Below are positions 13,860 through 49,464 of a DNA stretch of 64,000 nt, one piece after another. How positions within the stretch are numbered: the first letter of the stretch is position 1; each line of letters begins with the position of its first letter. The position numbers and the translations under genes were made by a program. This stretch comes from Perna viridis (taxonomy: Eukaryota). The notes under the pieces are model-generated. The model did no database searches, was not told the DNA's origin, and saw only the letters and a list, made by a program, of their open reading frames with translations. The stretch spans positions 26,040,001 through 26,104,000 of the forward strand of contig CM074513.1 of assembly GCA_037379345.1 (NCBI GenBank), in the 5' to 3' direction.

Positions 13860-14660
13860 ACTTCTATTTCTGATATGTCCTTGACTTTTATGCACTGGTT
13901 TCCTAGGTTCGACCTTGTCTATACTGTCCTCTGTATTTACACTCTCTGTATCAGATTTATCCTCATGGTTCTCTTCCACGTCATATGAGTCAAGGTCAGT
14001 CTGTGGTACATTAGGATCATTCTTCTGATTTGAGATAGAATTGATCATTATTTCGTTACCAGAGGTATCCTTAACACCAGTCACATGACCATTAACAAGT
14101 ACACTGTTTCCCGTGTTTGCAGGAGCTTGCCCATTAATAGTAATTACAGAAATGTTTTTACCTTTTTGCTCTTTCTGATCTTTCTTATCAGACTTTTCAT
14201 CATCACTATCAACCCTTACTTTTATTTCCTGTTCCTCTAATTTGGAATCCATTTCAGTTTTCTGAACAATAGCAGTTTTTGGTTTATCACCAGGCTGTCC
14301 AATTTCAATTCTAGTAACACTAGATCCACTATTTTTGTCATTTGATACACTTTCCATATCTTTCTCTTCAGATTTAGGCACATCTTCTGCTTTTACATTT
14401 TTGTCATTTTCAGTTTTTTCATCAACTTTATCAACAAGATCATCAAGTTCATTTTCAATATCAGCAACATCATAGGTAGATGTTTCATTTTCCTCATCAT
14501 CTTCCTGATTGACAACATCATTAATAGTATCAAATACAACCTCCGCCACAGAAGGCTCGGTTTCTGTAGATTTTAACACTTCATCAATAAGATCTTCAAC
14601 AAAACCTTCCATGTCAGCAACAACATCCTTATTATCTGCAGGCTTGGCAGGACTTTCATT
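13860..14660 (-). CDS. SLK: SLK exon 11, acidic disordered linker (NESPAKPADNKDVVADMEGFVEDL...HIRNRS)
   Basis: ttttcag|AAT ... AGT|gtaagt; 801 nt, open, phase 0-0; overlaps ORF 13710..14612. Confidence 0.85.
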
Positions 14661-33031: not shown

Positions 33032-36000
33032 ATGTCGGGAAAGAAATATAAAGTAGCTAGAGCTTATTCGTTACGTGTGCTGAAGGATGATAGCCCAACA
33101 GGAACTTACCGCAAGATTTCGGATGATGTGATCACTGCGCGAAATCCACGCGTTAGTAGACCGTTGAGTTTTGCATATGGCGAAAAAGACATAAACATAT
33201 TAAGAAGATATAACGGAGAAAAAAATGATGTGCTGGACAATAGAAACAAAAACGCCCTTACTTGGTCCGGAGAAACTCCTTTTAGAGCTGAATCGTGCAG
33301 AAGTTTAGACGAAACGCCACCACAGCTATCGATATCCGCAGATATAAATGGTGATACAGAACTTTTACCGTTTGACTTAGACAAGAAAGGTGAAATAGAA
33401 TTACAAAAGGACGAGGAACCTAGTCAACCTCTATCAAAGGAAAGGAAAGACAGTAGTTCAAGTTCTAGTAGTGACAGCGAGAGCAAGAAAAAGAAATCAA
33501 GTGAAAGAAAAAGTTCAAGCTCTAGCTCGTCGTCTCATTCTAGTAGGGACGTTTCGAAATTGAACGGCAATGACGACCGTCTTTCCAATCTGGAAATTTT
33601 GATAAGTCCAGAATCTGCAATATCCGTCCAAGCAACAAATCAAATCCCGGAAATATATCAGGATACTGGCTCTCAGGAATACGACACAGCAGACAGACGT
33701 CATACAGTGTATGAGACTCCATGGGATAGCGGTAAGGAAAACAATATTGATATTGATATAAAATATTCTGAACATGACACTTCTGTAGGAAGTATCGAAG
33801 ACGAAATAATTGACCACGTAAAAACACCTTTAGTAAACAGAGAGCTTTTACCTGAAATAATAACTGCATCTCCCGGTGAAAAGTCAACTATTCGCAGAAA
33901 TTCCTCCACTTCTAGCAAAAACAGCCAACATAGTCAAACCTCCACTGAAAATAACATAGCATCAAGCATTTATAGCGCAACCCCACCTTTACCAACATCC
34001 TCACCACCAGAAATCATGGTCGACTCGCCACCCGAATCTATAGAAGTGGAAGTAATCAAAGACCAAATCAATCTACAACCAATACAAGATAATGAAGAGC
34101 TTCTTGGGGAAGAAAATGTAGATGACTCTTCAAAAAGACTTTCAGTTACATACTATGGCCCGGTTTATATGCACGACAATGTCCTTATCATGCCAACATC
34201 AAACTCACAGTTCTCAGGGGGAGACAAGTCATATGAGAATGGGATGATTTTCCAAGGTCAAATAGAGCTAGAGTATGTTCCTCAAGATCAGTACGATCTC
34301 AATTCTTCGAAAACGTCAGACACTGACGAGTCAGAATTAAATACATCCAATGCCCCAGAAATATCCAACATCAAAATAAGCTTGTCAACAGACAATACTG
34401 ACGGTGAAGATGTAAATGATTCTATAATCCCCGTGCCTGTTATTACTGCCGAGTTCATCACGCCATCAGAATCATTTCCACCGAAGGTATCTGACAACCT
34501 AATTGATAAGAGCAAATCTAGTCAGTCATCTTCTAGTTCATCTTCTAGTTCAAGCTCATCCGATTCCGAGTCGGAGAAAGAAGACAAATCAGAAAAGCCA
34601 GAAGGCCAAAACAAGAAAATCGACCATGATTACGCAAACATTATAATACCTGATCCCGACTTACGGGATGACACTAAACAATCTACCTCATCATCTTCTG
34701 AAGATGAACGCAAAAATCAATCACCAATAAACCAAGAAACGCCCGATGAAATTACAATAGTTGACACACAAACTGATCCAATCGAATTCGAAGTCAGTGG
34801 AACTATCTTAGAACCAGTCATTGAGCTGTCTACATCCAATGTTTCTCATTTAAAGCCACTAAACCAAACTTTTCTAAAATGTGATCCCTCAGTATACATT
34901 ACACATGAGGTTGAAGACTCCCCGAAAGAAGTCGAAAATACTGAAATTACGGAAGAAATTAAAAACATAGTGGACGAACCTCAACCTCATGTTAAAAGAT
35001 ATGAAAAGATACAAAGGTCGAAATCTAGTTCAAGTTCAAGTTCAAGTTCAAGTTCTTCAAGTTCATCTGAATCAGAAGATGAAAAGACAAACAACTGTTC
35101 TTTAGTTGATCAAAAGATTAAGCGAAACGAATCTAGTTCGTCTGACTCAAACCACGAAACAAAAGAAATTGTACCAGAAACAACACCATCCTCAGTACCA
35201 ATAATTAAAGAGCAACACAAGTCAACCTCATCTAGCTCTTCTGAATCAGGTCACGAAGTAAAAGATGTTCAAGAACCAAAAACGCTTGCAAATCAAATAG
35301 TTATAGAACAAAAGTGTTCGTCTAGTTCTTCTGAGTCTGATCACGAAGCAAAAGATGTTCAAGAACCAAAACCGTACCCAGATCCAAAAGCCGTAAAACA
35401 AGAGCGTAAATCAAGCTCGTCTAGTTCATCTGATTCTGATAAAGAAACAAAGAAACCAATTTCATCTATAAAACCATTTGTTAAAGAAGAAAAATGCAAG
35501 TCCAGTTCATCTAGTTCCTCTGAATCTGATGACAACACAGAGAAAAAAGTTAAAGAACCTTGCCCTTTTACAGAATCTACGGTAATAGAACCAAATCACA
35601 AGTATAGTTCATCTAGTTCATCTGAATCTGATCACGAAATGCAAAAAACAAAACCTCGCACGGAACAAGTAATTATAGAACAGAAGCACAAATCGAGTTC
35701 ATCTAGTTCTTCGGAGTCTGATAACGAAACAAATAAAAGGGTTCAAGAACCTTCTTCTCCAGAACCTACAATAAAAAAGATAAAGCGTAAGTCTAGTTCT
35801 AGTTCATCTGAATCTGATCACGAAACGAAGAAACCCAAACATCCCAAGGAAAAACCTGTCATAGAACAAAAGCACAAATCAAGTTCATCTAGTTCTTCGG
35901 AGTCTGATAACGAAACGAAGAAAAGGGTTCAAGAACCTTCTCCTTCTCCAGAACCTACAATAACAGAGATAAAGCGTAAGTCTAGTTCTAGTTCATCTGA

Positions 36001-38222
36001 ATCTGATCACGAAATGAAGAAACCCAAACATCCAAAGGAAGACCTTGTCATAGAACAAAAGCACAATTCAAGTTCATCTAGTTCTTCGGATTCTGATAAT
36101 GAAACAAAGAAAAGGGTTCACGAACTTGCTCCTTCTCCAGAATCTATAGTAACAGATATAAAGCGCAAGTCTAGTTCCAGTTTATCTGAATCTGATCACG
36201 AAATGAAGAAACCCAAACATCCAAAGGAAGATCCGGTCATAGAACAACAGCGCAAGTCAAGTTCATCTAGTTCTTCAAGTCGTGATGATGCACAACACTG
36301 TTTTACAGATAAAGAATGTCATAAGCCAGAGATCATAGTGAGTGATGACAGAACACACGAACCTGAACCGACACCTATCATAATTGAGAAAAAGACAACA
36401 CAAAACGATTCCAGCAGTTCAAGTTCCTCCGAATCTGATGATGACACAACGGAAGCAGAAAAGGAACCAATAAAACCCCACGAGAAAGTTGGTCGGAAAT
36501 CTAGTTCAAGCTCAAGTTCATCTAGTTCATCTGAATCAGATGACAACAAAAAGGAGAAATGTCCAGTTACAGAGAAAACAACCGAGGGGACCGTACAAAC
36601 AGCAAGATCAAGGTCCAGTTCATCTAGTTCATCTGCATCAGACGCTGAGAAGACAAAACTTAACGATAACGATCGCGGGGATACTGAATCCAAGAATGAC
36701 AATTTACAAATTGTTGTCCGAACACCTAGTCCTATTGAACAAAAGACTAAACGAGGCGATTCAGCCATTTCTAATTCATCATCAAGTTCTGAGGATGACA
36801 GTGACATACAGAAAAAAGGTTCAGACAGCAATGATAAAAATGTTGATTGTAATTCAGTTGGGAATACTTTGAAAGATGATGACTCATGTAAACCGGTGTC
36901 GTCAAAAACTGAAGAACAAGAGAAAGAATCCGGCTCATCCAGTTCCTCCGAATCAGATGAAGATAGAAAGATAAAAGGAAATATTAATATTAATTCTATA
37001 CCAAAGTCTCCCAAGGATGAAACACTGGTTGTATATGAAAAAGTACCATCTGACCAAGATATAAGGTCAAGAAAATCTAATTCATCTAGCTCGTCTAGCT
37101 CGTCTAGCTCTTCAGAGTCTGACGATGAAAAGCCTAAATCGAAGAAGAACAACACTAAAAAGCCTGATACAAATGAAAGCGCGAAAAAGTCTAGTTCATC
37201 GAGTACGTCAGAGTCTGATTCTGAGAAAAAAGGAAAAACTGGTAGCATTGGAAAAGTCTTTTCAGAGATGTTGCCTGCATCTAGCAAGATTATTGATATT
37301 GAACAACCGACATTTCCGAATTTTGAGACGCCGACAGTTGATAAAGACGACACTATAACACTGATTAAACCGACGGTTTCCATAGAATCCGATATCAAAT
37401 ATGGTGAAACAAGTAATATCAACAACTTTCCAAGTGTGTCAACTCCAGACATCATACCAGAAGGCAACGTTCAAGTTGAAGCAGTGATCTTGCCAAAAGC
37501 CGACTCTTTACTCGAGTCTGTAAATGATGAAATTATTATCGATCCGATGTTGATAAAAAAGCCCGAAAACTCTGACGACAAAACACATAAGAAAAGTAGG
37601 TCGTCGTCTTCCTCGTCATCCTCATTAAGTTCGTCTGATTCTGAGTCGTGTGATAAAAAGAAACAAGATAGTGCACCAGCAAAGTTAAAGACCATGCCTA
37701 TTGCAGAGGTGGATATTTCGAAGGTGAAAGAACTAGCACCCGAACCAGACGTGCAGGTAAATATAGAACATGGAAATAAAAACAACAGTAGTACTGCTGG
37801 CACTGCAGATTATGAAAAACAAAACGCGTTTGAGAATGACCAGCCCCTTGTAAAGATAAAAACACCCCAGTCAGAGGAAGTGTCACTGGAAATACCAGAG
37901 AATTACATGCCATACGTCCCTGACAAAGAAGCAGATATGGTAATTGAGCAAACATCTCCAGAAATATTTAAAGATTCTCAAACAGACGAACCAACGCCTA
38001 AAGAAAATAAGAAAGGCAAAAAGACGAAAGACTCGGGCAAAAAGAAGCCGGACTTCAGCTTAAAAATACCAGAAAAGATAACTTCTCTTGTGCACAAACT
38101 ATCATTCAAAGGCGGCGACAAAGGATATTCCAAATCACATGAAAACCTTAACATCGCAGAACCGATAGTTAGTGAAAAAGTTACAGGAGTTCAGACCATG
38201 CCCGTTACAGCATCAAAACTGG
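33032..38222 (+). CDS. HSPA12A: HSPA12A-like gene, exon 1: giant 5191-nt exon encoding a disordered poly-Ser/acidic/basic region
   Basis: 1730 open codons with an in-frame TAA just upstream of the ATG. Ends CTG G|gtgagt (phase 1), compatible with the exon 2 acceptor. The same SSSSS..SDxE motifs continue into exon 2. Confidence 0.75.
35600..36280 (+). repeat. Coding tandem repeat, period 186-189 nt (62-63 aa), about 3.5 copies
   Basis: GATCACGAAA recurs at 35630, 35816, 36005 and 36194. Unit is approximately [63 protein letters not shown]. Confidence 0.9.
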
Positions 38223-40932
38223 GTGAGTTCATTTTTTTTCATATCTTTGATATACTCGAAACTTATCTTTAACATGTCTCGCTTTGGGTTACAGGTCTGT
38301 ACATGTAAAAATTTCGTATGTTTTACTATGTGACACATGTTCACGTTAAACTAAGCTACAGCAATTAGCTCAAGATGATTCTTTCCTTCAGCTCTTACGT
38401 TTAAAGTTCATTTTACGTAATAGGAAAACAATTTGTTTCTACCATGGTAACCTTTAAAACAACATTCTAGAAAAGGTCAAATAAGAGTACATTCATTATG
38501 ATAAGAAATAATAACCATTGAGTCTATGTGGTATTCCGATTGTTGTTAGTCCCTAAAAACACCAGTTGTAAACAATAGACTATTTACAGCCATTGCAATT
38601 ATTTTGTCTCCACCTTTTGATGTTTTATAAAGCTGTACTTTTCATTGACATTGAAAGACTTCGAAAGCAAATACATAAAAAAACACATGGTAAGAAAAAA
38701 AAAAACTACTACATTTTATGATCTATTAGCCCCCATGGGCATTTATGTTTTTGCCACCTAATGATCTAACGTCATTATTTTATAATAGTGTATACCAGAC
38801 ATTATAATAGATTACTCCCACACACGTAATAAGTCAACTTATCTTCTGGCTTTTATTCTTCACGTTTGCCTTATTCTAGCGTTTTATACTAGTCCGTAGT
38901 GGACCTTTTTATATCCTTATTTTTCACATGCATCAACGAAATATTGTCAAAATTGTATACATTCATTTAGACAAGATTACAATTATTTTTATACACTGCC
39001 ACCAATATAGAATTTTCTAGTAATCTACATAAAAAGGGAAAGTAACAAAATTAATACATTTGAATACTGGTTTCGTCTAAAATGGAAGAAAAATGATTTT
39101 TAAAATTTGAAGTGCTTTCTGTGCCAAGAAATGCAAGGCTATGAAAACAGGTTTTCTTGCAGATTGAATGAATGTAACAGGTTTAAGATGCTGTCTTAAA
39201 AAAAAACTATTTCTATATATGAAAGGCCTTCGTGTTGTTAATTATCTTCACGTTAAAGAATACATCATCTTTATTTTGAACAAACCGCTAATTCATCATA
39301 AGACATGAAACAACAAATTATTACGAAGTTTTCATTTTTTTAACAGAATTAAGTATTTCTTCACGGTTTTCGCACGAAAGGTGCTGGTGAACTCAAGCGT
39401 TATCAAAGGAGCACGAGATGACGTTTATGTATTGCTTAGTAAGTTAGAATGCTTTAGGGACCTCTTTTCCACAACTTATTTCTGTATCGGGTCGAAGTTA
39501 ATGTTACCTGTCACAATAGTGGAAACAAAATGTTCGTTTTATAATTATTCACTAATTGCTTTTTGTGTCTATAAAAAGAAGTTTATAATATTAATTTGTA
39601 TTTGAGAAAAATCGCTACTTTAACACACACATACAACAGACGAACGGACGGCATGACAGACATACAGACATCTGTATATCATAATACACCCATCAAAGAA
39701 GAGTCATTGGACTTGTATATCAATGATATACTTTGTGCATTTATATCATGTATTTAAACAGGACACTCTTTTTTTGGATTTGCATGATTTTTAAAAAAAC
39801 GTACAATTCAACAATAGTGGACTTTTTTGGCCTTCCTAAAAAAGTACAAGCAAAAGTATGTGTCTTAATCATGACACTCTGAACATTAATATTTTTCTTT
39901 GAATTATATTTTGATTTTTTTAACCACCTCGAAATAATTAGTGAATTTGTTTCATTGTTACTACACGAATATGTGACACGTTCTCGGTTTCGTTCGATTT
40001 GATTTGAAGAAAGATCATATCTTAAATTAGTGCTTGTCAAACCTAAAAATAAAAAAAGGGGATGTTTCCTCGGGCCATACGCCGTACCTGGTGTTTACGT
40101 GACCTGGGATTTGAGAATTGTTTATCTGTTTGGATATTTAGAAGTAACCATTGTAAAGATATAACAGTTTGAAAACCACTTTGATAAAGATAGTCATAAA
40201 ATGATAAGTAAACGTTACAGGTATCTGCAAACACTCAAGACATGCTCAAATCAAATAAATAATTATACCTACATGTTATCATATACTTCAGTTCTTATCT
40301 AATGTGGACTCTGGCGACAATTTCCAACTGACATTTGTGAGAGTTCTAAGTTCATTAAATTTTAAAATATGTACATTGAAATGAAATTGGGTAGGCCGAT
40401 ATTTACTTAGAATGTGTTATGGGATCCTTTGAACATATGTGCAGCTGATATCCTGAACCTTGATGCGTTACTACTGTTTAAACAATACACATTTATTTTT
40501 TTGCCCGGTGAAAGTTTAAAACAGCTCACAATTTCGTTGATTTTATGCATCGAGGCCTCCTTTCTTTTAACTGATAAATCACCTTAGCTAATTCACCATT
40601 GAAGCTACGACTGTTCGATAGCTAGGTATAATGGATGTAAATTTCTGTTTATTTATTCATTCCGTTGCTTTCTAGAACTAATTGTAGATTTAATCAAACG
40701 TATTTAAGCAAATAAATCATTCACACCCAGCATTGCCGTCAAGCTTCACATAAAAGTAAGTTCTCAATTTGTTCCAACCTTTAACTAGTTCTATAAAAAA
40801 AATGTTAAAAAGTCCATCGCACGATAAATGGTTAATGCTAGTCATGTTTTTTCATGATCTTAACTGTTTACATGTATCATAATTTTTGTTTATCATACAC
40901 AGCTAAAATACATTTTTTCATTGTTATTGCAG

Positions 40933-42614
40933 ATTCAAAAGACACAAAACAGAAAACAACAAAGAAAAGAAGCCATTTCAGAAAGAAAGAGAAGCAGAAA
41001 TCTAAGTCTTCCTCCTCGTCATCGTCGTCGTCCTCATGTAGTGACACAGAAGACGAGAAGGACGCGAAAAAGGTTGACATGAAGAAAGACAAGCAAATAC
41101 AAGTCAACGTTTTCAAAATTGATTTGAAAACGAATAAGATAAAGCAGCCTGATGGAAGTCAAACTAAGCGAAAGAAACCTAAATCAGTGGCAACGCCTCC
41201 GTCCACACCAGAATCTCCTTTCGATAAATTATCACATTTGTTCCATAGAACTCATAAGGCTAAGATAACGGACCCAAAACTGGACGCAAAGAAAGTTGAA
41301 AAAGAAAAGAAGAGAGATACAAAGAAAAGTAAGCAAAAGATAACACCATCGTTGATTGGAAGTAGTACCTCACATACTCCAACAGACGAAAAGGCGTTGC
41401 AATCAACACCAACGGTAGCAACCGGGAGTGCCTCTTCTTCATCTTATGACGGTAAGCATCTACCATTGTCTTCAACAGATGAGAAAACACGGGGTAATAT
41501 CTCATCTCCCGATACACCTAGAAAAATTGATACTGATGATCAAAGTCCTTTTAAGACTCTGCAAGAATATGCTAAGTCTCTAGATCGACACATTGATAGA
41601 ACTAAAAAAGAATTTTCAAGTTCTAGGTCAGATATTGAATTGGACAAAAACTCCGATGATGATAAGATTGAACCAGTTCGAATTCCAAGTCCGCTTGAAG
41701 ACATTATTGTTGAGCATAAAATTGAAAAAGTTGAAACAGCACGAGACCCTGGTTTTAAACCGTTATTTCCCGATATCCCGTGCCTGGAAAAGAGGACTTC
41801 ATTATCGTCACTTGAGAAAGAAATTGTTGTGGAACAACCAACATCGTCGGCTGATGAACTAGATTCTTCCATCCAAAACTCCACTTTTGACATGGGAGAT
41901 ATAGGTAGAGAGCCATTAGTTGATACACCAGATGACAATAAAACATGGAAATCTTTAAGTGAGCAATCAAAACTAAGAAGATCAAAGAGTTCATCGTCAT
42001 CATCTTCATCGTCGTCATCTTCATCTGCTGACTCAGTGAAGGCAGCAAAGGATAAATCACATGGACAACCCTTCGATGCCGATGTGCAAATTGTAAAGAA
42101 AGCAGAAATCCCAAAGAAAATTGACAATCTAGATGGCACTACTAGTCAGGACAATATAGAAAAAATTGTTCAAGAATCACTGAACACAGAACCGAGTCGA
42201 GTTTCGGTCGATCTATCGACCTCTTCGCCAGATATAATTCATAGAAGAGAACTTTCCATTGACACCACAGAGGCCTTGCAGACGTTAGACAATTCCATCA
42301 TTGCAGCAGAACAACCCTCACCAAAGCATAAAGGGCATTTCGTGGTTGTCGCTATAGATTTCGGAACAGCGTATAGTGGATATGCATTCAGTTTTACCCG
42401 GGACCCAGACAGTATTCATATGATGAGGAAATGGGAAGGTGGGGATCCTGGAATTATCAACCAGAAAACACCTACAACCATGCTGTTGACTCCAGATGGG
42501 TCTTTCCATTCTTTTGGTTACAGCGCAAGGGACAACTATCATGATATGAGCAAGGAACTGGCACAAGAATGGTTGTACTTTGACAAGTTCAAGATGACTT
42601 TTCACACCGCAACA
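40933..42614 (+). CDS. HSPA12A: HSPA12A-like exon 2: end of the disordered region plus start of the Hsp70-12 nucleotide-binding domain
   Basis: ttgcag|AT ... ACA|gtgagt; encodes [18 protein letters not shown] and [20 protein letters not shown], diagnostic of HSPA12A/B. Confidence 0.92.
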
Positions 42615-43756
42615 GTGAGTTTTAAAAACTAAGTTAAGTAAAATTGCGATTTTAAAGAAAAAAAAAGACAAGTTTAAAAGAGAGCTTAAAAAGTGATATT
42701 TATATAAGCATTTTATTCATTACTAGTAAACTAACGCTTTCAAAGTTTTTTTTGTAGTTATAAAACATGTTTTGTCTATTAGTATATGGGTGTTACAACA
42801 AAGGCTGGGAAATGAAACTAAGTCTTCATTGTAACTTATAAATTATGCCTTGACATGCTCCTTGTATCTAGTTATTACGGATCTACAAATGTTGAACGAC
42901 AATTTAAGCTTGTTTATTATGATGTAAAGATAGATTCGAATTGATTCACTGATTTAATAAAGCTGTATGTAGTAATATATGATGATGCATTTGAATATCA
43001 AATTAACATTACTGGGTATAAAGTACAAACATCGTTTGTTTTAACACCTTTGATCTTTGATGTGCATTCTTTGCATTCTTGTTCATTTTACTATAAATTT
43101 ACACAAAATATTCAGTATTTTTCCCTTGATAAATTATTTTAAGTTTATTGTTTTAATTATGCATAAAGGACATTTTAATCACCGTATTTTTTTCTTGTTT
43201 AATTGGCGAAAACAAAAATGAAGTGTTATGGCTATTTTTAATGACTAGAAAAATATCAAGTATTGTTTTGTTTTTGTTTTTTTTATGTGTTCAAATTGAA
43301 TAACTGACCTAATCATATGGTTCAAAGCTGAATTTTAGCATAATGGCCGAAATGATTAATCATATTTATGATATGAATAATAATAAGTGGAACATGTATA
43401 GCCACATCTAAATGGTAAAAGGAACCCAATACAAATAAAACGAAGGGAGGGAGGCCCAGATGTTCGGTCTGAGGGGCATCTAGCACGAACTGAGTGGGAA
43501 AAACACCAAATGCAAACCCAGACTAAGGAGAGAAGTCACTTTCAAAATACTGATCTTGAATTTTGTGTATTAGTGATATTTCTATTTGTCAATTTAATTG
43601 TTTATCTCTCTACTAATAAATGGAAAACTGTAGTAAAATAAACAATCTATCAAATATTGAATAAATATACATTTTTATTTTAATTACTCTTATTAATCTA
43701 ATAAAATATTGACGGTTTTCAAAATGTAACTAAGAGTAATACGAACTCTTCTCTAG

Positions 43757-43978
43757 GACCTAACAACTGAAACTATGTTAACGGCAGCAAATGGCAGACC
43801 GTATCCTGCTTTGAAAATTTTCACCTACGCTCTCAACTTCTTTCGTGATCATGTGATCAAAGAACTGTCCGACCAATCAGGTGTCAGGATCCTAAATGAA
43901 GACATCAGATGGGTAGTATGCGTACCTGCAATATGGAAAGCACCAGCTAAACAGTTCATGCGACAAGCAGCTTACAAG
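43757..43978 (+). CDS. HSPA12A: HSPA12A-like exon 3 (IRWVVCVPAIWKAPAKQFMRQAAYK)
   Basis: ctctag|GAC ... AAG|gtataa; HSPA12 VPAIW motif. Confidence 0.93.
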
Positions 43979-44294
43979 GTATAAACCACATCAAACTTTT
44001 CAAGCCTAGATTTTTGTTCCTTTGTTCCTTCATTTCTACGTTTTATTCCATACCAAAAGAAAAAAAGAGACAGTGCATTCAATGAGAATTATAAGATATA
44101 TTTTATAAACATATCAACCTTAGTTGAACTCAATAGAAAAGGAAACGTACATGCAGGACCCTGGTGTAGATTTTCATGACCAACTAAATTGTTGAACCAC
44201 AAAAACAAAAAAACAAAAACAAACAAACAAACAAACACATGCAAAAAATAATGAAGCAATACGGGGTTGAAATATAAACCATCTTAATATTTAG

Positions 44295-44478
44295 GCTGGA
44301 ATCGCATCCGAGGAATGCCCAGACCAGCTGTTGATAGCACTAGAGCCAGAGGCAGCGTCAATCTTTTGTCGAAAGCTGAGAATGCACCAACTTGTTCTTG
44401 AGGAACAACGCCCCCTACAGTCACCTACAAGGAGTGAACCCGTAAATCTGGACGATGCCTTTGAAGTTTCTAATCAAG
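44295..44478 (+). CDS. HSPA12A: HSPA12A-like exon 4 (QLLIALEPEAASIFCRKL)
   Basis: ttag|GCT ... G|gtaaca; ALEPEAAS motif. Confidence 0.93.
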
Positions 44479-44798
44479 GTAACATTGTTCAGAGGTGTAA
44501 ATAAACGGTGATCCTTATTTATTGTTTTTATTGGTTTTCATTTGAAGTTTAAACCTCCGAAACAGTGTTTATTTTGGCATTTTGGTCATTTTCTTCTTGC
44601 TTTTTTTCATATAAGAGGCATAAAGGCAGTTAGTGCTTGTTTCTTTTATCATGAGACAGTTAGCATCTACCTTAAGTAAGCTGCTTTCGGGATAAGTACA
44701 TTTTTATTGCATATATTTTATGTCATGGGAGTGCATACTAGAGTTTTACTATAAAACATGCAAATTTATTTAAATTTTATTCTTTGTTTTTCTTCCAG

Positions 44799-44831
44799 TG
44801 AACGAGTTTTCCATAGATATGATTCTTCGAG
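44799..44831 (+). CDS. HSPA12A: HSPA12A-like small exon 5 (VNEFSIDMILR), phase 1-1, possibly a cassette exon
   Basis: Long pyrimidine tract, ttcttccag|TG ... CGA G|gtattt; 33 nt, open. Confidence 0.6.
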
Positions 44832-45672
44832 GTATTTCAATATTTTGAGCCTGTTCTCTATTCTATCTTGTCCTAAACTTACTCATCTATGAATGACAGT
44901 ATGAAGCATGTTAACTTTACTTCCATTTGTAACCTATCTGAAGTTTTATTTATTGTACCCTTACATTTCTTACTGTCAAAACCTATCTATATATATCCAG
45001 TGTGTAACTGGCTAATATAGCCAGTAAGATATACCACTTTTCCCAAACGTATATTCTATGACAAATCTTCTTCACAAAGCAGTAATACCGTTATTTTTAT
45101 AGGCATAGTCATTTTAGTTATTGACCAATCATATTCTCAAGTGACAGAAGCCTTTTCCTGAATTTTGACCCATTTTAGTCATTTTTTTATGTGTTTGTAC
45201 AAAATCCCCAAAAGTGACTAAAGCTTTTGAAATCCTGACCAAAACACTGTTAATGTGGTAAGTGACATAATGATACAATGATGTGCTTTAGTCTTCCTTG
45301 ATATTGTAGTAATTCTTACCTTGTGAAAAACTGTTTGCCCCATACTAAGTTCTCAAAATCAAATTGAGACTCAAAGTCTGTCATGCTAGATTGATCACTC
45401 TCTTTGTAACACTGCTTCTCAAATGAGAATGCTACCATTGACTTGGTTCAGGAACTATCCTACATACTTTGATTTTGCGTTTAGTCAGAACTTGGAAATA
45501 ACTTATGACCAATATGATCTTGTAACATGACATCCAAAACTATGTGCAAGTATGAACGTCATCAGGTAATGAAACTACATATATAAGACACTTTATATTC
45601 CAGTTTTTAAAAAAGCAAAGCTAAATAAAAACGTTTCATTTCACGTTTTGATGCCGATGACGTCATTAGTTT

Positions 45673-45923
45673 GAAGGAGTAATCATGGGAACCAAGGTTG
45701 TAGCGGTAATCAAAAGAATGTAATCCAGGGACAAAGACCAGACATGGAAAACAGACATACACGACAAAGAACATAAAGTAACTAAATTCATACATACAAA
45801 GTAACAAAAGCAAATGAGCAACTCGGACTCCACTTAAAACTGGGAGCATGGACCAGGTGCACCGGTAGGGTAAGCGTCCTCTGCTTTTCTAGAAACACCC
45901 GCCGAGTTGCTCATAGAAAGTCA
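45673..45923 (-). mobile_element. 3'-end fragment of the same Penelope-like element, in an HSPA12 intron
   Basis: Closely matches 28045-28292 (GGAACCAAGGTT.TAGCGGTAATCAAAAGAATGTAATCCAGGGACAAAGACC...). Confidence 0.85.
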
Positions 45924-46038
45924 TGTACAATGTAATATGAGAATCCATTGCCAACTTACATAGTTTTGGTTTTCTGTGGGTGATATGATGTAATGATGCT
46001 ATACAATAATTAAAATAAATGTAAATTTTAATCTTCAG

Positions 46039-46161
46039 GAACTCGTTATATAGTGGTTGATTGTGGTGGAGGAACGGTGGACATCACTGTACATGAGCTA
46101 GATACCACGGGCAAACTAGCAGAGCTTCATAAAGCTAGCGGTGGACCATATGGGTCTATTG
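46039..46161 (+). CDS. HSPA12A: HSPA12A-like exon 6 ([17 protein letters not shown]...KASGGPYG)
   Basis: Hsp70 phosphate-2 motif DCGGGTVD; canonical splice sites. Confidence 0.95.
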
Positions 46162-46465
46162 GTATGTATTGGTTGTACATATTATACACATCGGAAGAAA
46201 ATATACTAATAATTTGATTTTTTTTTATGTTTTAACATAACTGCATCTACATTGTATAAAATGTAACTACATGTACATTGTAAAAAAATTACTGATGTGC
46301 TTACTGGAAAATATTCCGATGTTCGCATTACTTTCAGTATAATTCGCGTATAATAGTGCATGGCTTGTAATATCTTAGGACACTTAAATGTTTGACAAAA
46401 AATGTTCTATCTTACTCAGTTATAATCGACTGGCATTATTCTCTGGTTTATATTTCTTTCCTAAG

Positions 46466-46668
46466 GTGTTGATATGGAGTTTGAAAAACTAATGATGAAG
46501 ATATTCGGAAAGAATATTATAGAGCAGTACAAGTTTAAGAGATCGGCTGGCTGGATTGACATGCTTGTAGCATTTGAATCGAGAAAGAGATCAGCATCTC
46601 CTGACAAGACCACACCTCTGAATATCGCGTTGCCATTTTCGTTCATAGATTACTATAGAAAACACAAG
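46466..46668 (+). CDS. HSPA12A: HSPA12A-like exon 7 (WIDMLVAFESRKR...LPFSF)
   Basis: Canonical splice sites; HSPA12 motif. Confidence 0.92.
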
Positions 46669-47499
46669 GTAGGCACATCATTGGCTGACACCACAAGAAA
46701 GTAAAATTGAGGCCTATTTCTACTTGTAGATAATTAATTCGCATGTTGGGTCAATCTATGTTGGAAAAGTATTTGGGGCTATAACTTCAGGTGAAAACCT
46801 ATGTTAAGAAAATGAAAAAATAAACATAACTATGTCTTTCATGTTATGTATGTAAACTTGTTTTTTACTTTTATTTATTTAATGACATTAAAAAAATCGA
46901 CCAGGAAATTTTAAGAGGATGTGCTATGAACGAGGAACTAAAGACTGCACGAAGGCCCAATCAATTTACCACCAAGCATTTTTACAAAAGTTTTAATAGG
47001 TTATTTCACTTAAAATATACATAAATGTCAAATGTTCAGGGTTTTTTGGTAACAATTACTATAACTGTCATTACGAATTTAAAGAGTTTTAAATTTAACA
47101 ACCGAAAGACTACTAATTCTACCAGGAATGTTAGTTTATCATCTTATTATGGAAGAATATTATATCATTATTTATATCATATTGATAAGGGAATTTAGGA
47201 TTGTTGACCAACAACAACGTACCCATTAGGTGGTGAAAAGAAATACCCAAAATCAAAATTATCAAAATAGGAAGCCAAAGGTTACAAGTGCTTTATGTAT
47301 TTTAATTTAATGTCTCGACCAATGGACCCAAATTTGTTTTGCTTTGGTTCACATTTCATGGTTCACTGTACAATAATACATTGGAATGTTTATACCGAAA
47401 AATATCAGTCGGGGTCTGCATTTTGTTTGAGACCTTTTCTTCTTGTGTGTGTTTGTAAACCAATACTTGGGCAAAGGGATAAAGTTAACGTATAATAAC

Positions 47500-47683
47500 T
47501 ACTGTATACGTACTAATTTTTGCTGTTGACAGAAAACCGCGAAAAATAAAACACGCGAAATTGATTTTTAGCACTATATAACGCTAATGACTTTTTGAAA
47601 CCGCGAATATTGATACCCAGGAACATGTTCACTTGACAGAATCCGCGAAAATTAGCAACCGCGAAAATTAAACGTTTACAGTA
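47500..47683. mobile_element. Tc1/mariner-type MITE
   Basis: TA-CTGTATAC ... GTTTACAG-TA termini with internal CGCGAAA repeats. Confidence 0.7.
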
Positions 47684-47806
47684 TATAAAACGAGAAAAGG
47701 TATGGTGAATGTGTGAAAGAGACAACAATCCCACCTGGATGAAAATGTCAGTACAAGGCCACCCTCGTTTTATATAACCCCTTATAACTCATTTTTAACA
47801 TTTTAG

Positions 47807-47972
47807 CTTACTTCCATTGAAACTGCAATAAAACGATATGGAGATAAAGATGTCACATGGTCTTCACAAGGAATGCTTAGATTGGCCCCAGAAGCTATGA
47901 ATAAGCTCTTTCGTCCGACTGTACAGAAAATCAAAGAAAAAATTGGCACCATCCTAAATAATAACATACCAG
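47807..47972 (+). CDS. HSPA12A: HSPA12A-like exon 8 (WSSQGMLRL)
   Basis: ttttag|CTT ... G|gtaagt; HSPA12A/B WSSQGMLR motif. Confidence 0.92.
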
Positions 47973-48676
47973 GTAAGTGCAGATTCTGAGTTGAAATGGA
48001 AAGACATTTTTGGCAATTTATTCTTAATTGAAGCTTTGAACCAACCGGCACAGCTAACTCATTTATAATGTCGAATGACGTCATACCAAAGAAAAGGCAC
48101 ATGACATTTACAGTGTTTGCTGCGGAATAACATAATTTAGTTGTAACAAAAAAATAAATGTTAGTAGGACATTTTAATTTCTTGTTTACAACACCCATGT
48201 TAAAAAAAACCAACAAAATTTCTCAATAATGGATTGTCATAATAGACCATAAAAGGTAGCCAATTGTACATTTTGTTTTTGGAAATAATCCAAAAGATAT
48301 ATCATAGTGCAGCAGCGTCATACACCTTAACTGACATATGTAGATTAAAATTACAAACAAGTCAAACATATAACTAAAAAACGTCATTTGAAGACTTCAC
48401 TCGTTTATTATCTATAAGTGCTACATTCAAGGAAGTGATTCCATGAAGCAAATAACTACATATTGAAAACAAGAAACAAGAAACAAGTCTGACTTCGAAT
48501 CACACGATATGGCATATCAATATAAAACGTCTGTCAAAATATTAAGTTGACAGTACATATAAGTACATTAAAGAAAACGTTGAAAAGGTAGAAAAACGGC
48601 AGGTGACACTATGATCATTACCTCCATAAGTGGGGTTATAAAATTATATGTGTACAAAACACGGTCTTCTTTGCAG

Positions 48677-48805
48677 ATTTGAAGTATATGTTCCTTGTTG
48701 GAGGCTTTGCTGAATCCTCTATTGTACAAAATGAGATACGCCAAACTTTTGGAAACTCCATTCAGATCATCATTCCACAAGGGGTAGCCATGACCATTCT
48801 TAAAG
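48677..48805 (+). CDS. HSPA12A: HSPA12A-like exon 9 (FLVGGFAES...IIIPQ)
   Basis: Adenosine-binding motif LVGGF; canonical splice sites. Confidence 0.93.
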
Positions 48806-48979
48806 GTATTTATTTATTGTGCGATTTTAGAGAATGTGTTAGATATATTCAATTGAAACTTCTATAGAAAAGCCTCAACTGCAGGCTAAAGAATATTTTT
48901 GAAAAAAAACCCCAAAAAACTTTTCAACAACCTTAGATTTTATTGGCAAAATCCTTTGAAATTTAAATTACTGTTACAG

Positions 48980-49464
48980 GTGCCGTATTGTTTGGCCTTG
49001 ACCCAACCATTGTCAATGTCAGGAGATGCCCTTTGACTTATGGCGTCGGCGTTCTCAATCGATACAATCCTAAGAAACATCCGTTGAAAAAGAAGGTGTC
49101 GCGCCAAGGGATAGACTGGTGTACCGACATCTTCGATAAATATGTCGTAGTTGACGAGCCGGTTACAATCGGAGATATCATTTTACGTAGTTACACGCCG
49201 GCTCGGAAGGACCAAAGGTTGATTCAAATTAACATTTACTGCAGTGAAAATAAAGACCCAAAATTTATCACAGAACCTGGTGTATATAAAGTTGGAACAG
49301 TGACACTGCATTTATCGAATACCAGTGACGATGAATGCGACGTTCCAAAAAGAAGAGAGATTCAGACGCGGATGCAGTTTGGAGAAACGGAAATCAGAGT
49401 TTGTGCTCTTGATGTGTCTACGGGTGAAAATATTCAATCAACTGTTGATTTTCTCAGTAGATAA
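48980..49464 (+). CDS. HSPA12A: HSPA12A-like last coding exon (GAVLFGLDP...LTYGVGVLNRY...REIQTRMQFGETEI...VDFLSR*)
   Basis: ttacag|GT; stop TAA ends at 49464. The spliced CDS totals 8418 nt, or 2805 aa. Confidence 0.93.

What the first reader, a model, noticed from the sequence alone, without database searches (positions are those of the whole stretch)
33032..49464. Giant HSPA12: an atypical Hsp70 fused to about 2200 aa of basic / poly-serine / acidic repeats
Seen: phase-consistent splicing gives 2805 aa, with the Hsp70-12 domain starting only near 42340. The extension has roughly 30 blocks of the form (K/R)xSSSSS(S)nESD(D/H/N)E separated by Lys/Pro/Glu-rich spacers, and no evident signal peptide or transmembrane segment. 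The Hsp70 part carries vertebrate-like HSPA12A/B motifs (WEGGDPG..NQKTPT, WSSQGMLR), so it looks like the conserved orthologue rather than one of the divergent bivalve-expanded HSPA12 copies. Known: vertebrate HSPA12A/B are under 700 aa. S-x-x-E/D is the CK2 consensus, and alternating acidic-serine and basic blocks typify CK2-hyperphosphorylated condensate scaffolds such as Nopp140 and Treacle. Inference: a chaperone-ATPase tethered to a phospho-switchable polyampholyte, possibly forming condensates or binding cations. I do not recognise this architecture as described.
Basis: partly seen in the sequence, partly recalled or inferred. Interest (0 to 1): 0.75.

Follow-up and report, generated by a model that had tools for sequence, protein, structure and literature searches.

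The report
Giant disordered-tailed HSPA12 chaperone gene
This is one real nine-exon gene for a roughly 2,800-residue version of the atypical chaperone HSPA12, in which a long serine-rich disordered arm sits in front of the ATPase; similarly long forms occur in many invertebrate groups but seem never to have been studied.

Summary
A 1746-codon ORF (33032-38272) and a second exon (40933-42614) that runs from similar low-complexity sequence into an HSPA12-type ATPase are joined by a GT..AG splice at 38222/40933. Intron-less contigs of two RNA-type runs from two studies carry that joint. One 5.7-kb contig links about 2 kb of exon 1 to exons 2 and 3 and runs on.

A related species has 2370-aa full-length proteins of the same build.

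The ATPase part is the single conserved orthologue of vertebrate HSPA12A/B: 53-62% identity, against 24-38% for 66 other matches in this genome, and a 100/100 tree split.

The architecture is not unique. 56 database proteins of 1309-3712 aa from molluscs, arachnids, crustaceans, echinoderms and a hemichordate carry the domain at or near the C-terminus. I found no paper discussing this.

Special here is the inflation of Ser-run/acidic blocks (29 runs), partly by recent tandem duplication.

The CK2/condensate mechanism remains inference. Human HSPA12A binds acidic clusters (PMC6345817), which suggests a testable self-ligand model.

The parts
33032..38222 (+). Exon 1 (5191 nt): start codon and 1730 codons plus 1 base of the disordered extension
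   Evidence: ORF. In-frame TAA 6 nt upstream of the ATG. Donor G|GTGAGT. RNA contigs and sense-strand raw reads on its 3' end. Single copy in the genome.
33032..33406 (+). Conserved island A (aa 1-125), including the N-terminal motif MS..KY.V...PG.YRK(I/L)
   Evidence: 69% identity to P0003. The motif is shared with 14 of 56 giant HSPA12 proteins and with 0 of 1420 control windows.
34133..34480 (+). Conserved island B (aa 368-483: KRLSVTYYGPVYMHDNVLIMPTS...)
   Evidence: Run of invariant columns in alignment A1. Only weak strand propensity in AlphaFold2, pLDDT below 50.
35231..36276 (+). Tandem coding repeats (90-bp and 189-bp periods) that generate the regular Ser-run/acidic/basic blocks
   Evidence: TRF: period 189, 4.1 copies, 86% matches at 35497-36276; period 90 at 35231-35401. 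Protein units printed.
37973..38218 (+). Conserved island C (aa 1648-1729: KKPDFSLKIPEKITSLVHKLSFK...)
   Evidence: BLASTP and phmmer matches to the relative's protein.
38223..40932 (+). Intron 1 (2710 nt, GT..AG, phase 1)
   Evidence: Skipped in contigs of X1 and X5. Zero contig depth over 38400-40799. Low sense-strand raw-read depth in X16.
40933..42614 (+). Exon 2: 467 aa of extension, then the start of the HSPA12 ATPase from about 42336
   Evidence: 42% identity to P0005. 62% identity to shark HSPA12A over 42306-42614. Joint 42614/43757 in an X1 contig.
43757..43978 (+). Exon 3 of the gene (HSPA12 domain)
   Evidence: 86% identity to P0005. Lies in the X1 contig. Borders.
44295..44478 (+). 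Exon 4
   Evidence: 84% identity to P0005. Loose ends at 43979 in X16, X1 and X5 read into its first bases. Borders.
46039..46161 (+). Exon 5 (phosphate-2 motif [10 protein letters not shown])
46466..46668 (+). Exon 6
47807..47972 (+). Exon 7 (WSSQGMLR)
48677..48805 (+). Exon 8 (adenosine motif LVGGFAES)
48980..49464 (+). Exon 9 with the stop codon (49462-49464)
   Evidence: 86% identity to P0005. 53% identity to shark HSPA12A. Borders.

Best explanation
Shown: 33032-49464 is one nine-exon gene on the + strand. It encodes a 2794-aa protein. Its last ~596 aa are the atypical Hsp70-type ATPase of the HSPA12 family, and this is the single pro-orthologue of vertebrate HSPA12A and HSPA12B. Its first 2198 aa are a hydrophilic extension rich in Ser, Lys, Glu and Asp, with no confident predicted fold in the 560 residues modelled.

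Shown: long extensions in front of this ATPase are common among invertebrate orthologues in the databases. Vertebrates have about 50 residues there.

Shown: in this lineage the extension has been inflated by tandem duplication of 30/63-aa units. Each unit carries a Ser run followed by an acidic patch and flanked by Lys/Pro-rich basic spacers.

Inferred (about 0.3): the Ser runs are processively phosphorylated from their acidic 3' flank by an acidophilic kinase such as CK2. This would turn the arm into an alternating phospho-acidic/basic polyampholyte. Such an arm could give multivalent, switchable self-association or partner binding, as in Nopp140 and Treacle, and so concentrate or position the nucleotide-regulated HSPA12 module. 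The short conserved islands (aa 1-125, 368-483, 1648-1729) would be docking motifs.
For: Splicing: a 5713-nt contig in X1 lies on 38000-38221, 40932-42614 and 43757-43979. It runs on 1798 nt upstream and 1787 nt downstream. A 497-nt contig in X5 crosses the same first joint. Both skipped parts are GT..AG, and no contig runs into intron 1.

Even depth: word depth is similar on exon 1's tail, exon 2 and exon 3 in X5 (10.5 / 8-11.5 / 10.3). Read depth in X16 is also similar (5.1 / 1.5-9 / 3.3). All X16 pairs over the exon 1 tail and most of exons 2-3 show one orientation.

No retrocopy: the extension is single-copy, and no intron-less high-identity copy exists in the genome.

Relative: P0005 and P0008 (2370 aa) have the same build. 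The 1260-1285-aa forms end '...KHGK*' where the long forms read '...KHEIK'. That fits a phase-1 donor read through in genomic ORFs.

Orthology: 55-58% identity over 99-100% of the domain to vertebrate HSPA12A/B. The window's exons are 53-62% identical to shark HSPA12A, against 24-38% for 66 other matches. In the tree, 17 orthologue-type rows split from 12 paralogues with 100/100 support.

Spread: 56 proteins of 1309-3712 aa carry the domain, 49 of them with at most 5 residues after it.

Disorder: no Pfam family, AlphaFold2 mean pLDDT 33.8 for aa 1-560, no hydrophobic stretch.

Phospho-pattern: 27 of 29 Ser runs are followed by D/E. The iterated rule reaches 242 of 459 S/T, against 115.8 +/- 11.6 in shuffles. 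Ser runs mix a median of 4 of the 6 Ser codons, so the runs are kept at the protein level.
Against: Raw reads: neither raw-read run (X16, X17) has a listed joint at 38221/40932. The same holds for the undisputed 42614/43757 joint, so depth is probably too low.

Contig limits: contigs do not prove single molecules. What I laid links exon 1 only from about 36.2 kb on. The 5' 3.2 kb rests on the unbroken ORF, the shares of words held and the relative's full-length protein.

Weak homology of the extension: beyond one relative, phmmer finds nothing among 57 sequences. Only 3 hits appear in 1.84 billion representatives. The cross-phylum N-terminal motif was defined after looking at the sequences.

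Weak kinase signal: minimal CK2 sites are only modestly enriched in exon 1 (108 vs 84.9 +/- 7.3) and not in exon 2 (26 vs 19.1 +/- 3.5). The relative has only 9 Ser runs, so the striking pattern is young and could be neutral.

Other caveats: low pLDDT may reflect the 4-sequence alignment. The atlas hit (0.78) is below the level of a lead. No phosphorylation, localisation or interaction data exist.
Confidence: 0.8

Rival explanations
1. The giant isoform is real, but the arm is a largely neutral, fast-evolving spacer. The Ser-run/acidic blocks would be by-products of tandem duplication and slippage. Only the few conserved islands and the ATPase would carry function, with no phospho-switch or condensate role.
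For: The extension is 28% identical to the relative over exon 1, against 74-87% in the ATPase exons. 189-bp repeats at 86% match point to recent duplication. The relative has 9 Ser runs against 29 here. No other extension is alignable.
Against: A long Ser-rich (6-18%), acidic and basic arm is kept in front of the domain in several phyla. The 5.2-kb frame stays open. Ser runs are encoded by mixed codons. 27 of 29 runs keep an acidic 3' flank.
Confidence: 0.3
2. Two neighbouring genes: a stand-alone Ser-rich protein from 33032-38272 and a normal-sized HSPA12 that starts within or after intron 1. The joint would then be a rare read-through chimera.
For: The first homologues found were 1260-1285 aa and ended near the donor. 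Sense-strand raw reads lie in intron 1 at 39400-39799, and that stretch is single-copy. Databases also hold invertebrate forms of 614-1038 aa, some of them listed as numbered isoforms.
Against: In X1 and X5 the only continuation of exon 1 is exon 2, at equal depth. Exon 2 itself carries 467 aa of the same kind of sequence ahead of the ATPase in one open frame. The relative's 2370-aa proteins are full-length fusions, and the short forms fit genomic read-through of the donor. Many phyla have the long form.
Confidence: 0.04
3. Secreted or mineral-binding acidic Ser-rich protein, of the shell-matrix or phosphophoryn type, fused to an ATPase.
For: Ser/Asp/Glu-rich repeats recall acidic biomineralisation proteins (recalled knowledge).
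Against: No hydrophobic N-terminus or segment: the first 30 aa have mean hydropathy -0.83 and the maximum 19-residue mean is 0.96. The C-terminal partner is a cytosolic-type ATPase. The same build occurs in spiders, crustaceans and echinoderms.
Confidence: 0.02

Closest known systems
Vertebrate HSPA12A / HSPA12B (atypical Hsp70 family members, 641-686 aa)
   Same: The whole ATPase region aligns: 55-58% identity over 99-100% for the relative's domain, and 53-62% for the window's exons 2 and 9 against shark HSPA12A. The phosphate-1, phosphate-2 and adenosine motifs are invariant in alignment A2 and present here. The gene branches with them on a tree that broadly follows the species tree.
   Different: Vertebrates have a median of 52.5 residues before the domain, over the 82 rows P0124-P0205. 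This protein has 2198. It stands before the 12A/12B duplication. Here the domain lies in 8 exons; human HSPA12 has 12 coding exons (PMC2266713, passages read).
Predicted giant HSPA12-like proteins of other invertebrates (for example Elysia marginata 2519 aa, Lymnaea stagnalis 2542 aa, Acanthaster planci 2816 aa, Anneissia japonica 3099 aa)
   Same: Same order of parts: a long Ser-rich, charged N-terminal stretch, then a C-terminal HSPA12 domain. Molluscs, echinoderms and a hemichordate share the N-terminal motif.
   Different: Their extensions are not alignable to this one by phmmer. They have 0-10 Ser runs against 29 here. Most are gene predictions without functional study, and they carry names that hide the relationship.
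Nopp140 (NOLC1) and Treacle (TCOF1): nucleolar scaffolds with alternating acidic-serine and basic repeats, heavily phosphorylated by CK2 (recalled knowledge)
   Same: Alternation of Ser-run/acidic patches with Lys/Pro-rich basic spacers in regular repeats. Nearest protein-atlas cluster is 'putative Treacle protein' (0.78, weak).
   Different: No sequence homology shown, and no Pfam family of either. Those proteins carry no Hsp70-type ATPase. Localisation here is unknown.
Expanded bivalve HSPA12 paralogues
   Same: Same superfamily. At least 66 matches in this genome.
   Different: 24-38% identity to shark HSPA12A, against 53-62% for this gene. In the sampled copies the C-terminal half is one open frame of about 350 aa. 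They are separated by a 100/100 branch of length 1.9. I did not examine whether any carries a long extension.

Membership tests
HSPA12 (atypical Hsp70, HSPA12A/B orthologue group) | Homology over the whole HSPA12 ATPase region with named vertebrate HSPA12A/B | tested here: met
   The relative's domain is 55-58% identical over 99-100%. Window exon 2 is 62% and exon 9 is 53% identical to shark HSPA12A. The window's ATPase exons 3-9 are 74-87% identical to P0005; the exon 2 match, which also spans its extension, is 42%.
HSPA12 (atypical Hsp70, HSPA12A/B orthologue group) | Falls in the orthologue clade, not among lineage-specific paralogues | tested here: met
   The tree has 29 rows: 17 orthologue-type against 12 paralogues of G000, split at 100/100.
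HSPA12 (atypical Hsp70, HSPA12A/B orthologue group) | Actin/Hsp70-fold nucleotide-binding motifs intact (phosphate 1 DFGT, phosphate 2 DxGGGTxD, adenosine VGGFxES; motif names recalled) | tested here: met
   [10 protein letters not shown] (exon 2), [10 protein letters not shown] (exon 5) and LVGGFAES (exon 8). The same columns are invariant in A2. The orthologue profile hits the HSPA1A nucleotide-binding domain at E 8.2e-6.
HSPA12 (atypical Hsp70, HSPA12A/B orthologue group) | Match to Pfam HSP70 (PF00012) | tested here: not met
   No family at E <= 0.01 for the window's ORFs or for P0005, P0030 and P0048. Many vertebrate HSPA12 rows carry a precomputed PF00012. The family is known to be very divergent (PMC2266713).
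HSPA12 (atypical Hsp70, HSPA12A/B orthologue group) | Size under about 700 aa with a short N-terminus, as in the described vertebrate members | tested here: not met
   2794 aa with a 2198-aa N-terminal extension.
HSPA12 (atypical Hsp70, HSPA12A/B orthologue group) | ADP/ATP-regulated client binding | not testable with these tools
   Reported for human HSPA12A and the SorLA tail (PMC6345817, abstract and passages read).
Nopp140 / Treacle type CK2-phosphorylated repeat scaffolds | Family-specific conserved domains (Nopp140 C-terminal SRP40 domain, Treacle family domain, LisH N-terminus; recalled) | tested here: not met
   Pfam scan of the 1746-aa ORF and of exon 2 found 0 families.
Nopp140 / Treacle type CK2-phosphorylated repeat scaffolds | Regular alternation of acidic-serine clusters and basic spacers | tested here: met
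   29 Ser runs, 27 with an acidic 3' flank and 23 with a basic 5' flank. 63-aa tandem units.
Nopp140 / Treacle type CK2-phosphorylated repeat scaffolds | Actual CK2 hyperphosphorylation and nucleolar or condensate localisation | not testable with these tools
   Only an in-silico n+3 rule: 242 of 459 S/T reachable in exon 1, against 115.8 +/- 11.6 in shuffles.

The most novel reading that the evidence does not exclude
The Ser-run/acidic clusters of the arm are built-in ligands of the protein's own HSPA12 module. The only mapped client motif of human HSPA12A is a pair of acidic clusters in the SorLA tail, bound better with ADP than with ATP (PMC6345817). An arm with about 30 clusters that become phospho-acidic could therefore bind the ATPase module in cis, giving auto-inhibition, or in trans, giving a multivalent network. 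The result would be an assembly set by kinase activity and dissolved or remodelled by the nucleotide cycle. On this reading the giant form would be the ancestral bilaterian state, and vertebrates would have shed the arm and moved the ligands onto separate client proteins.
Probability: 0.12. Interest if true: 0.75.

Novelty: new variant of a known kind. Interest (0 to 1): 0.5.

Why it matters
HSPA12A/B are among the least understood Hsp70 relatives, and a 2008 survey found them only in vertebrates (PMC2266713). Bivalve studies concentrate on the expanded paralogues (PMC11268181, PMC10939072).

This work shows that the true orthologue in a bivalve is a transcribed 2794-aa protein. It also shows that comparable giants sit unrecognised in databases across molluscs, arthropods, echinoderms and hemichordates. 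That changes the picture of the family's ancestral form and points to a function for which the vertebrate proteins give no hint.

It also gives a concrete experiment: test whether acidic or phospho-Ser clusters bind the HSPA12 module in a nucleotide-dependent way.

On the practical side, many of these proteins are named 'mucin-2', 'serine-rich adhesin' or 'enolase-phosphatase E1-like' and would be missed in Hsp70 family counts.

Tried and rejected
Pfam on the single ORFs and on three full-length relatives gave nothing.

phmmer of the two extension pieces against 57 giant proteins found only the one close relative. Simple regular expressions for the internal islands also found only that relative.

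A search of 1.84 billion representatives with aa 1-500 gave 3 hits, all from the same relative group.

AlphaFold2 of aa 1-560 gave no confident fold, with mean pLDDT 33.8 on a 4-sequence alignment. I did not run a fold search on it.

The protein atlas gave one weak lead, 'Treacle' at 0.78.

I considered and rejected an intron-less retrocopy as the source of the spliced contigs. The extension is single-copy, and no long high-identity match exists elsewhere in G000.

I considered a transposon as the source of the intron 1 reads, but the stretch is single-copy.

Literature: six searches gave no paper on a long HSPA12 extension. Supplementary Table S2 of PMC11268181, which may identify a 2391-aa oyster 'MgHSPa1A-1', is closed.

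The search of earlier findings returned three notes on other places; none bears on this finding.

Full report
**What is in the sequence.** On the + strand there is a 1746-codon ORF at 33032-38272. About 2.6 kb further on there is a 592-codon ORF at 40854-42632. The second ORF starts as Lys/Ser/Asp-rich low-complexity sequence and runs without a break into [18 protein letters not shown]...[15 protein letters not shown]. The ATG at 33032 is preceded by an in-frame TAA 6 nt upstream. The window has 29-41% G+C, so an ORF of this length cannot be chance.

The first ORF passes a strong donor, CTGG|GTGAGT, with the exon ending at 38222 in phase 1. The second ORF contains a strong acceptor, TTTTTTCATTGTTATTGCAG|AT, with the exon starting at 40933. 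The split codon G+AT encodes Asp and keeps both frames.

Seven further exons downstream carry the rest of an HSPA12-type domain. I found them as open segments and by tblastn with a full-length relative. Their AG/GT borders and phases were checked one exon at a time. They are 43757-43978, 44295-44478, 46039-46161, 46466-46668, 47807-47972, 48677-48805 and 48980-49464.

The nine exons sum to 8385 nt, that is 2794 aa plus stop.

**Is it one transcript?** I laid two raw RNA runs (X16, X17) and the contigs of two likely RNA runs from other studies (X1, X5) on 38000-43990.
- In X1, one 5713-nt contig lies on 38000-38221, 40932-42614 and 43757-43979. It continues 1798 nt upstream, into exon 1 to about 36.2 kb, and 1787 nt downstream.
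- In X5, a 497-nt contig crosses the same first joint, with 222 nt on one side and 29 nt on the other.
- Both skipped parts are GT..AG.
- No contig in X1 or X5 runs into intron 1, and contig depth is zero over 38400-40799.
- Depth is even across exon 1's tail, exon 2 and exon 3. In X5 it is 10.5, 8-11.5 and 10.3. In X16 raw reads it is 5.1, 1.5-9 and 3.3. The long form therefore looks like the main product in those samples.
- All X16 pairs over the exon 1 tail and most of exons 2-3 have the first mate on the minus strand, which in the usual stranded libraries means + strand RNA.

Points against or neutral:
- Neither raw run has a listed joint at 38221/40932. Neither has one at the undisputed 42614/43757 either, so low depth is the likely cause.
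- Contigs do not prove single molecules.
- The 5' 3.2 kb of exon 1 was not physically linked in what I laid.

A retrocopy as the source of intron-less contigs is unlikely. The extension's first 560 aa are single-copy in the 723-Mb assembly, and no long high-identity HSPA12 match exists outside the window.

**The relative.** The 1746-aa ORF found three proteins of 1260-1285 aa from unnamed assemblies. They share three islands with it: aa 1-125 at 69% identity, aa 156-483 at 45%, and aa 1617-1729 at 40%. They stop a few residues after the point that matches our donor, which at first suggested a stand-alone gene.

The cluster of P0001 also holds two 2370-aa members, P0005 and P0008, on contigs of 8.0 and 8.8 kb. 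These read from the same N-terminus through about 1750 aa of extension into a complete HSPA12 domain. The short forms end '...KKRHKHGK*' where the long ones read '...KKRHKHEIKE...'. That is what a phase-1 donor (G|GTAAA TAA) read through in genomic DNA would give. Several short members come from metagenome sources.

So the same fusion, with an intron at nearly the same place, exists in another species. Against P0005, the window's ATPase exons 3-9 are 74-87% identical, exon 2 is 42% and exon 1 is 28%.

**Which HSPA12 is it?** The relative's domain is 55-58% identical over 99-100% of its length to vertebrate HSPA12A and HSPA12B of 641-686 aa (best 120 of 2930 hits listed).

I searched the window's own genome with shark HSPA12A and got 68 scored matches. 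The two inside the window are 62% (exon 2 part) and 53% (exon 9) identical. The other 66 are 24-38% identical. In the 12 I sampled, the C-terminal half is a single open frame of about 350 aa, and many lie on contig C10. These are the expanded bivalve copies.

I built a maximum-likelihood tree of the C-terminal half with 29 rows. There were 17 orthologue-type rows, including P0005 as stand-in for the window's protein, and 12 paralogues that I picked's 66. The two groups split with 100/100 support. Within the orthologue side the branching broadly follows the species tree: molluscs together, echinoderms with the hemichordate, amphioxus with vertebrates, and the 12A/12B split inside vertebrates. 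Four paralogue rows have long branches, and their placement among the paralogues is unsure.

The nucleotide-binding motifs are intact. A profile of orthologues reaches the HSPA1A nucleotide-binding domain at E 8.2e-6. Pfam's HSP70 model does not match at E <= 0.01.

**How unusual is the architecture?** It is not unique. A search with the relative's domain, restricted to proteins of 1300-4150 aa, gave 56 proteins at E <= 1e-10. They come from these groups:
- Molluscs: Pinctada 1608 aa, Gigantopelta 2005, Haliotis 1344-1582, Patella 1500, Lymnaea 2542, Elysia 2519, and others.
- Spiders and mites: 1310-1717 aa.
- Crustaceans: 1354-1860 aa.
- Echinoderms: 1616-3099 aa.
- A hemichordate: 1628 aa.

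In 49 of the 56, at most 5 residues follow the domain. The stretch in front is 526-3458 aa, with 6-18% Ser and many charged residues. A few rows are evident mis-fusions: one with a reverse-transcriptase family, one with a DHHC family and one with dynactin. Eight rows cover the domain only partly.

Source names include 'uncharacterized protein', 'mucin-2', 'serine-rich adhesin for platelets-like', 'enolase-phosphatase E1-like' and 'heat shock 70 kDa protein 12A'. Invertebrate forms of 614-1038 aa also exist, some of them listed as numbered isoforms. Rows P0124-P0205, nearly all vertebrate, have a median of 52.5 residues before the domain. Proteins of about 1040-1300 aa fell between my two length windows and were not examined.

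The extensions cannot be aligned across groups. However, 14 of the 56 start with MS and carry, in order, a [KRSQ][YF][DEKR][VLIY] element and a G-x-[YF]-[RK]-x-[LIV] element within the first 70 residues. All 14 are molluscs, echinoderms or the hemichordate. The window's protein (KYKV...GTYRKI) and P0005 do the same. None of 1420 control windows from the same proteins does. I defined the pattern after seeing the sequences, so it is suggestive, not proof, of a common origin of the arm's N-terminus before protostomes and deuterostomes split.

**What is special here.**
- Exon 1 has 20.4% Ser and 26 runs of four or more Ser. Exon 2's extension has 3 more. The other giants have 0-10.
- 27 of the 29 runs are followed by Asp/Glu within three residues. 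23 are preceded by Lys/Arg/His. 21 have both.
- Much of the regularity comes from tandem duplication: a 189-bp unit in 4.1 copies at 86% match (35497-36276), and a 90-bp unit. As protein these read [59 protein letters not shown].
- The runs use a median of four different Ser codons. They are therefore not simple trinucleotide repeats.
- No 19-residue window exceeds a mean hydropathy of 0.96.
- AlphaFold2 gives mean pLDDT 33.8 for aa 1-560, from a shallow 4-sequence alignment.

**Mechanism (inferred).** By the minimal S/T-x-x-D/E rule, exon 1 has 108 sites against 84.9 +/- 7.3 in shuffles. Exon 2's extension has 26 against 19.1 +/- 3.5, which is not remarkable.

If each phospho-Ser primes the residue three positions upstream, a property of CK2 that I recall and did not test, the numbers rise. 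In exon 1, 242 of 459 Ser/Thr become reachable, against 115.8 +/- 11.6 in shuffles (maximum 144 of 200). In exon 2's extension, 42 of 116 become reachable, against 25.3 +/- 5.0.

The alternation with Lys/Pro-rich spacers resembles Nopp140 and Treacle (recalled). The protein atlas's nearest cluster is 'putative Treacle protein', but at 0.78, below the level of a lead. There is no homology to those families.

One published fact gives the idea a handle. Human HSPA12A binds the SorLA cytoplasmic tail through two acidic clusters. ADP increases that binding and ATP decreases it. The authors call SorLA the first described substrate (PMC6345817, abstract and passages read). An arm with about 30 clusters that can turn phospho-acidic could therefore be a ligand of its own ATPase module, in cis or in trans. 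This is my most novel reading, and I put it at about 0.12.

**Literature.** Six full-text searches found no paper on a long HSPA12 N-terminal arm.
- Brocchieri et al. 2008 found HSPA12 only in vertebrates among 18 genomes, and reports 12 coding exons (PMC2266713, passages).
- An oyster HSP70 survey gives lengths of 288-2391 aa, the longest being 'MgHSPa1A-1' (PMC11268181, passages).
- A blood-clam survey gives 173-944 aa (PMC10939072, passages).

**Verdict.** The orthology claim is supported. The claim of an unseen architecture holds only for the literature I could search, not for the databases. The phospho-switch and condensate function is plausible but untested.

Noticed in passing
window 39400-39799 (intron 1): Sense-strand raw RNA reads in X16 at depth 1.6-2.5, higher than in the rest of the intron. 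The stretch 39350-39850 is single-copy in the genome. It could be pre-mRNA or an unannotated alternative exon. No joint was listed.
   Followed up: partly
window 36319-37467, minus strand: A 382-aa ORF (LDELDELD...) on the opposite strand is the mirror image of the poly-Ser/acidic coding repeats. It is not a separate gene.
   Followed up: no
G000, many places, above all contig C10 (for example C10:4405214-4438492 and C10:39591890-39658635): At least 66 HSPA12-like matches at 24-38% identity to shark HSPA12A. In the 12 sampled copies the C-terminal half is one open frame. This is the expected bivalve expansion.
   Followed up: partly
window 13941-14633, minus strand: tblastn with P0005 aa 265-501 gives a weak match (23% identity, E 6e-5). 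It is probably Ser-rich low complexity in another gene.
   Followed up: no
window 41991-42026: Contigs of X1 and X5, and three X17 reads, match only 20-30 nt of the Ser-coding stretch here and have unrelated flanks (tables 5c, 7, 8). They come from other transcripts with similar low-complexity sequence, not from variants of this gene.
   Followed up: no
P0029 (82 aa) and P0028 (117 aa), fragments from unnamed assemblies: P0029 shares the N-terminus of the extension but diverges after '...NRPLS'. P0028 carries island B behind unrelated residues. These may be assembly fragments or alternative splicing in the relative.
   Followed up: no
PMC11268181 (oyster HSP70 survey): The longest family member listed is a 2391-aa protein named MgHSPa1A-1. 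By its size it may be the oyster counterpart of this giant HSPA12 under another name. Table S2 was not available.
   Followed up: no
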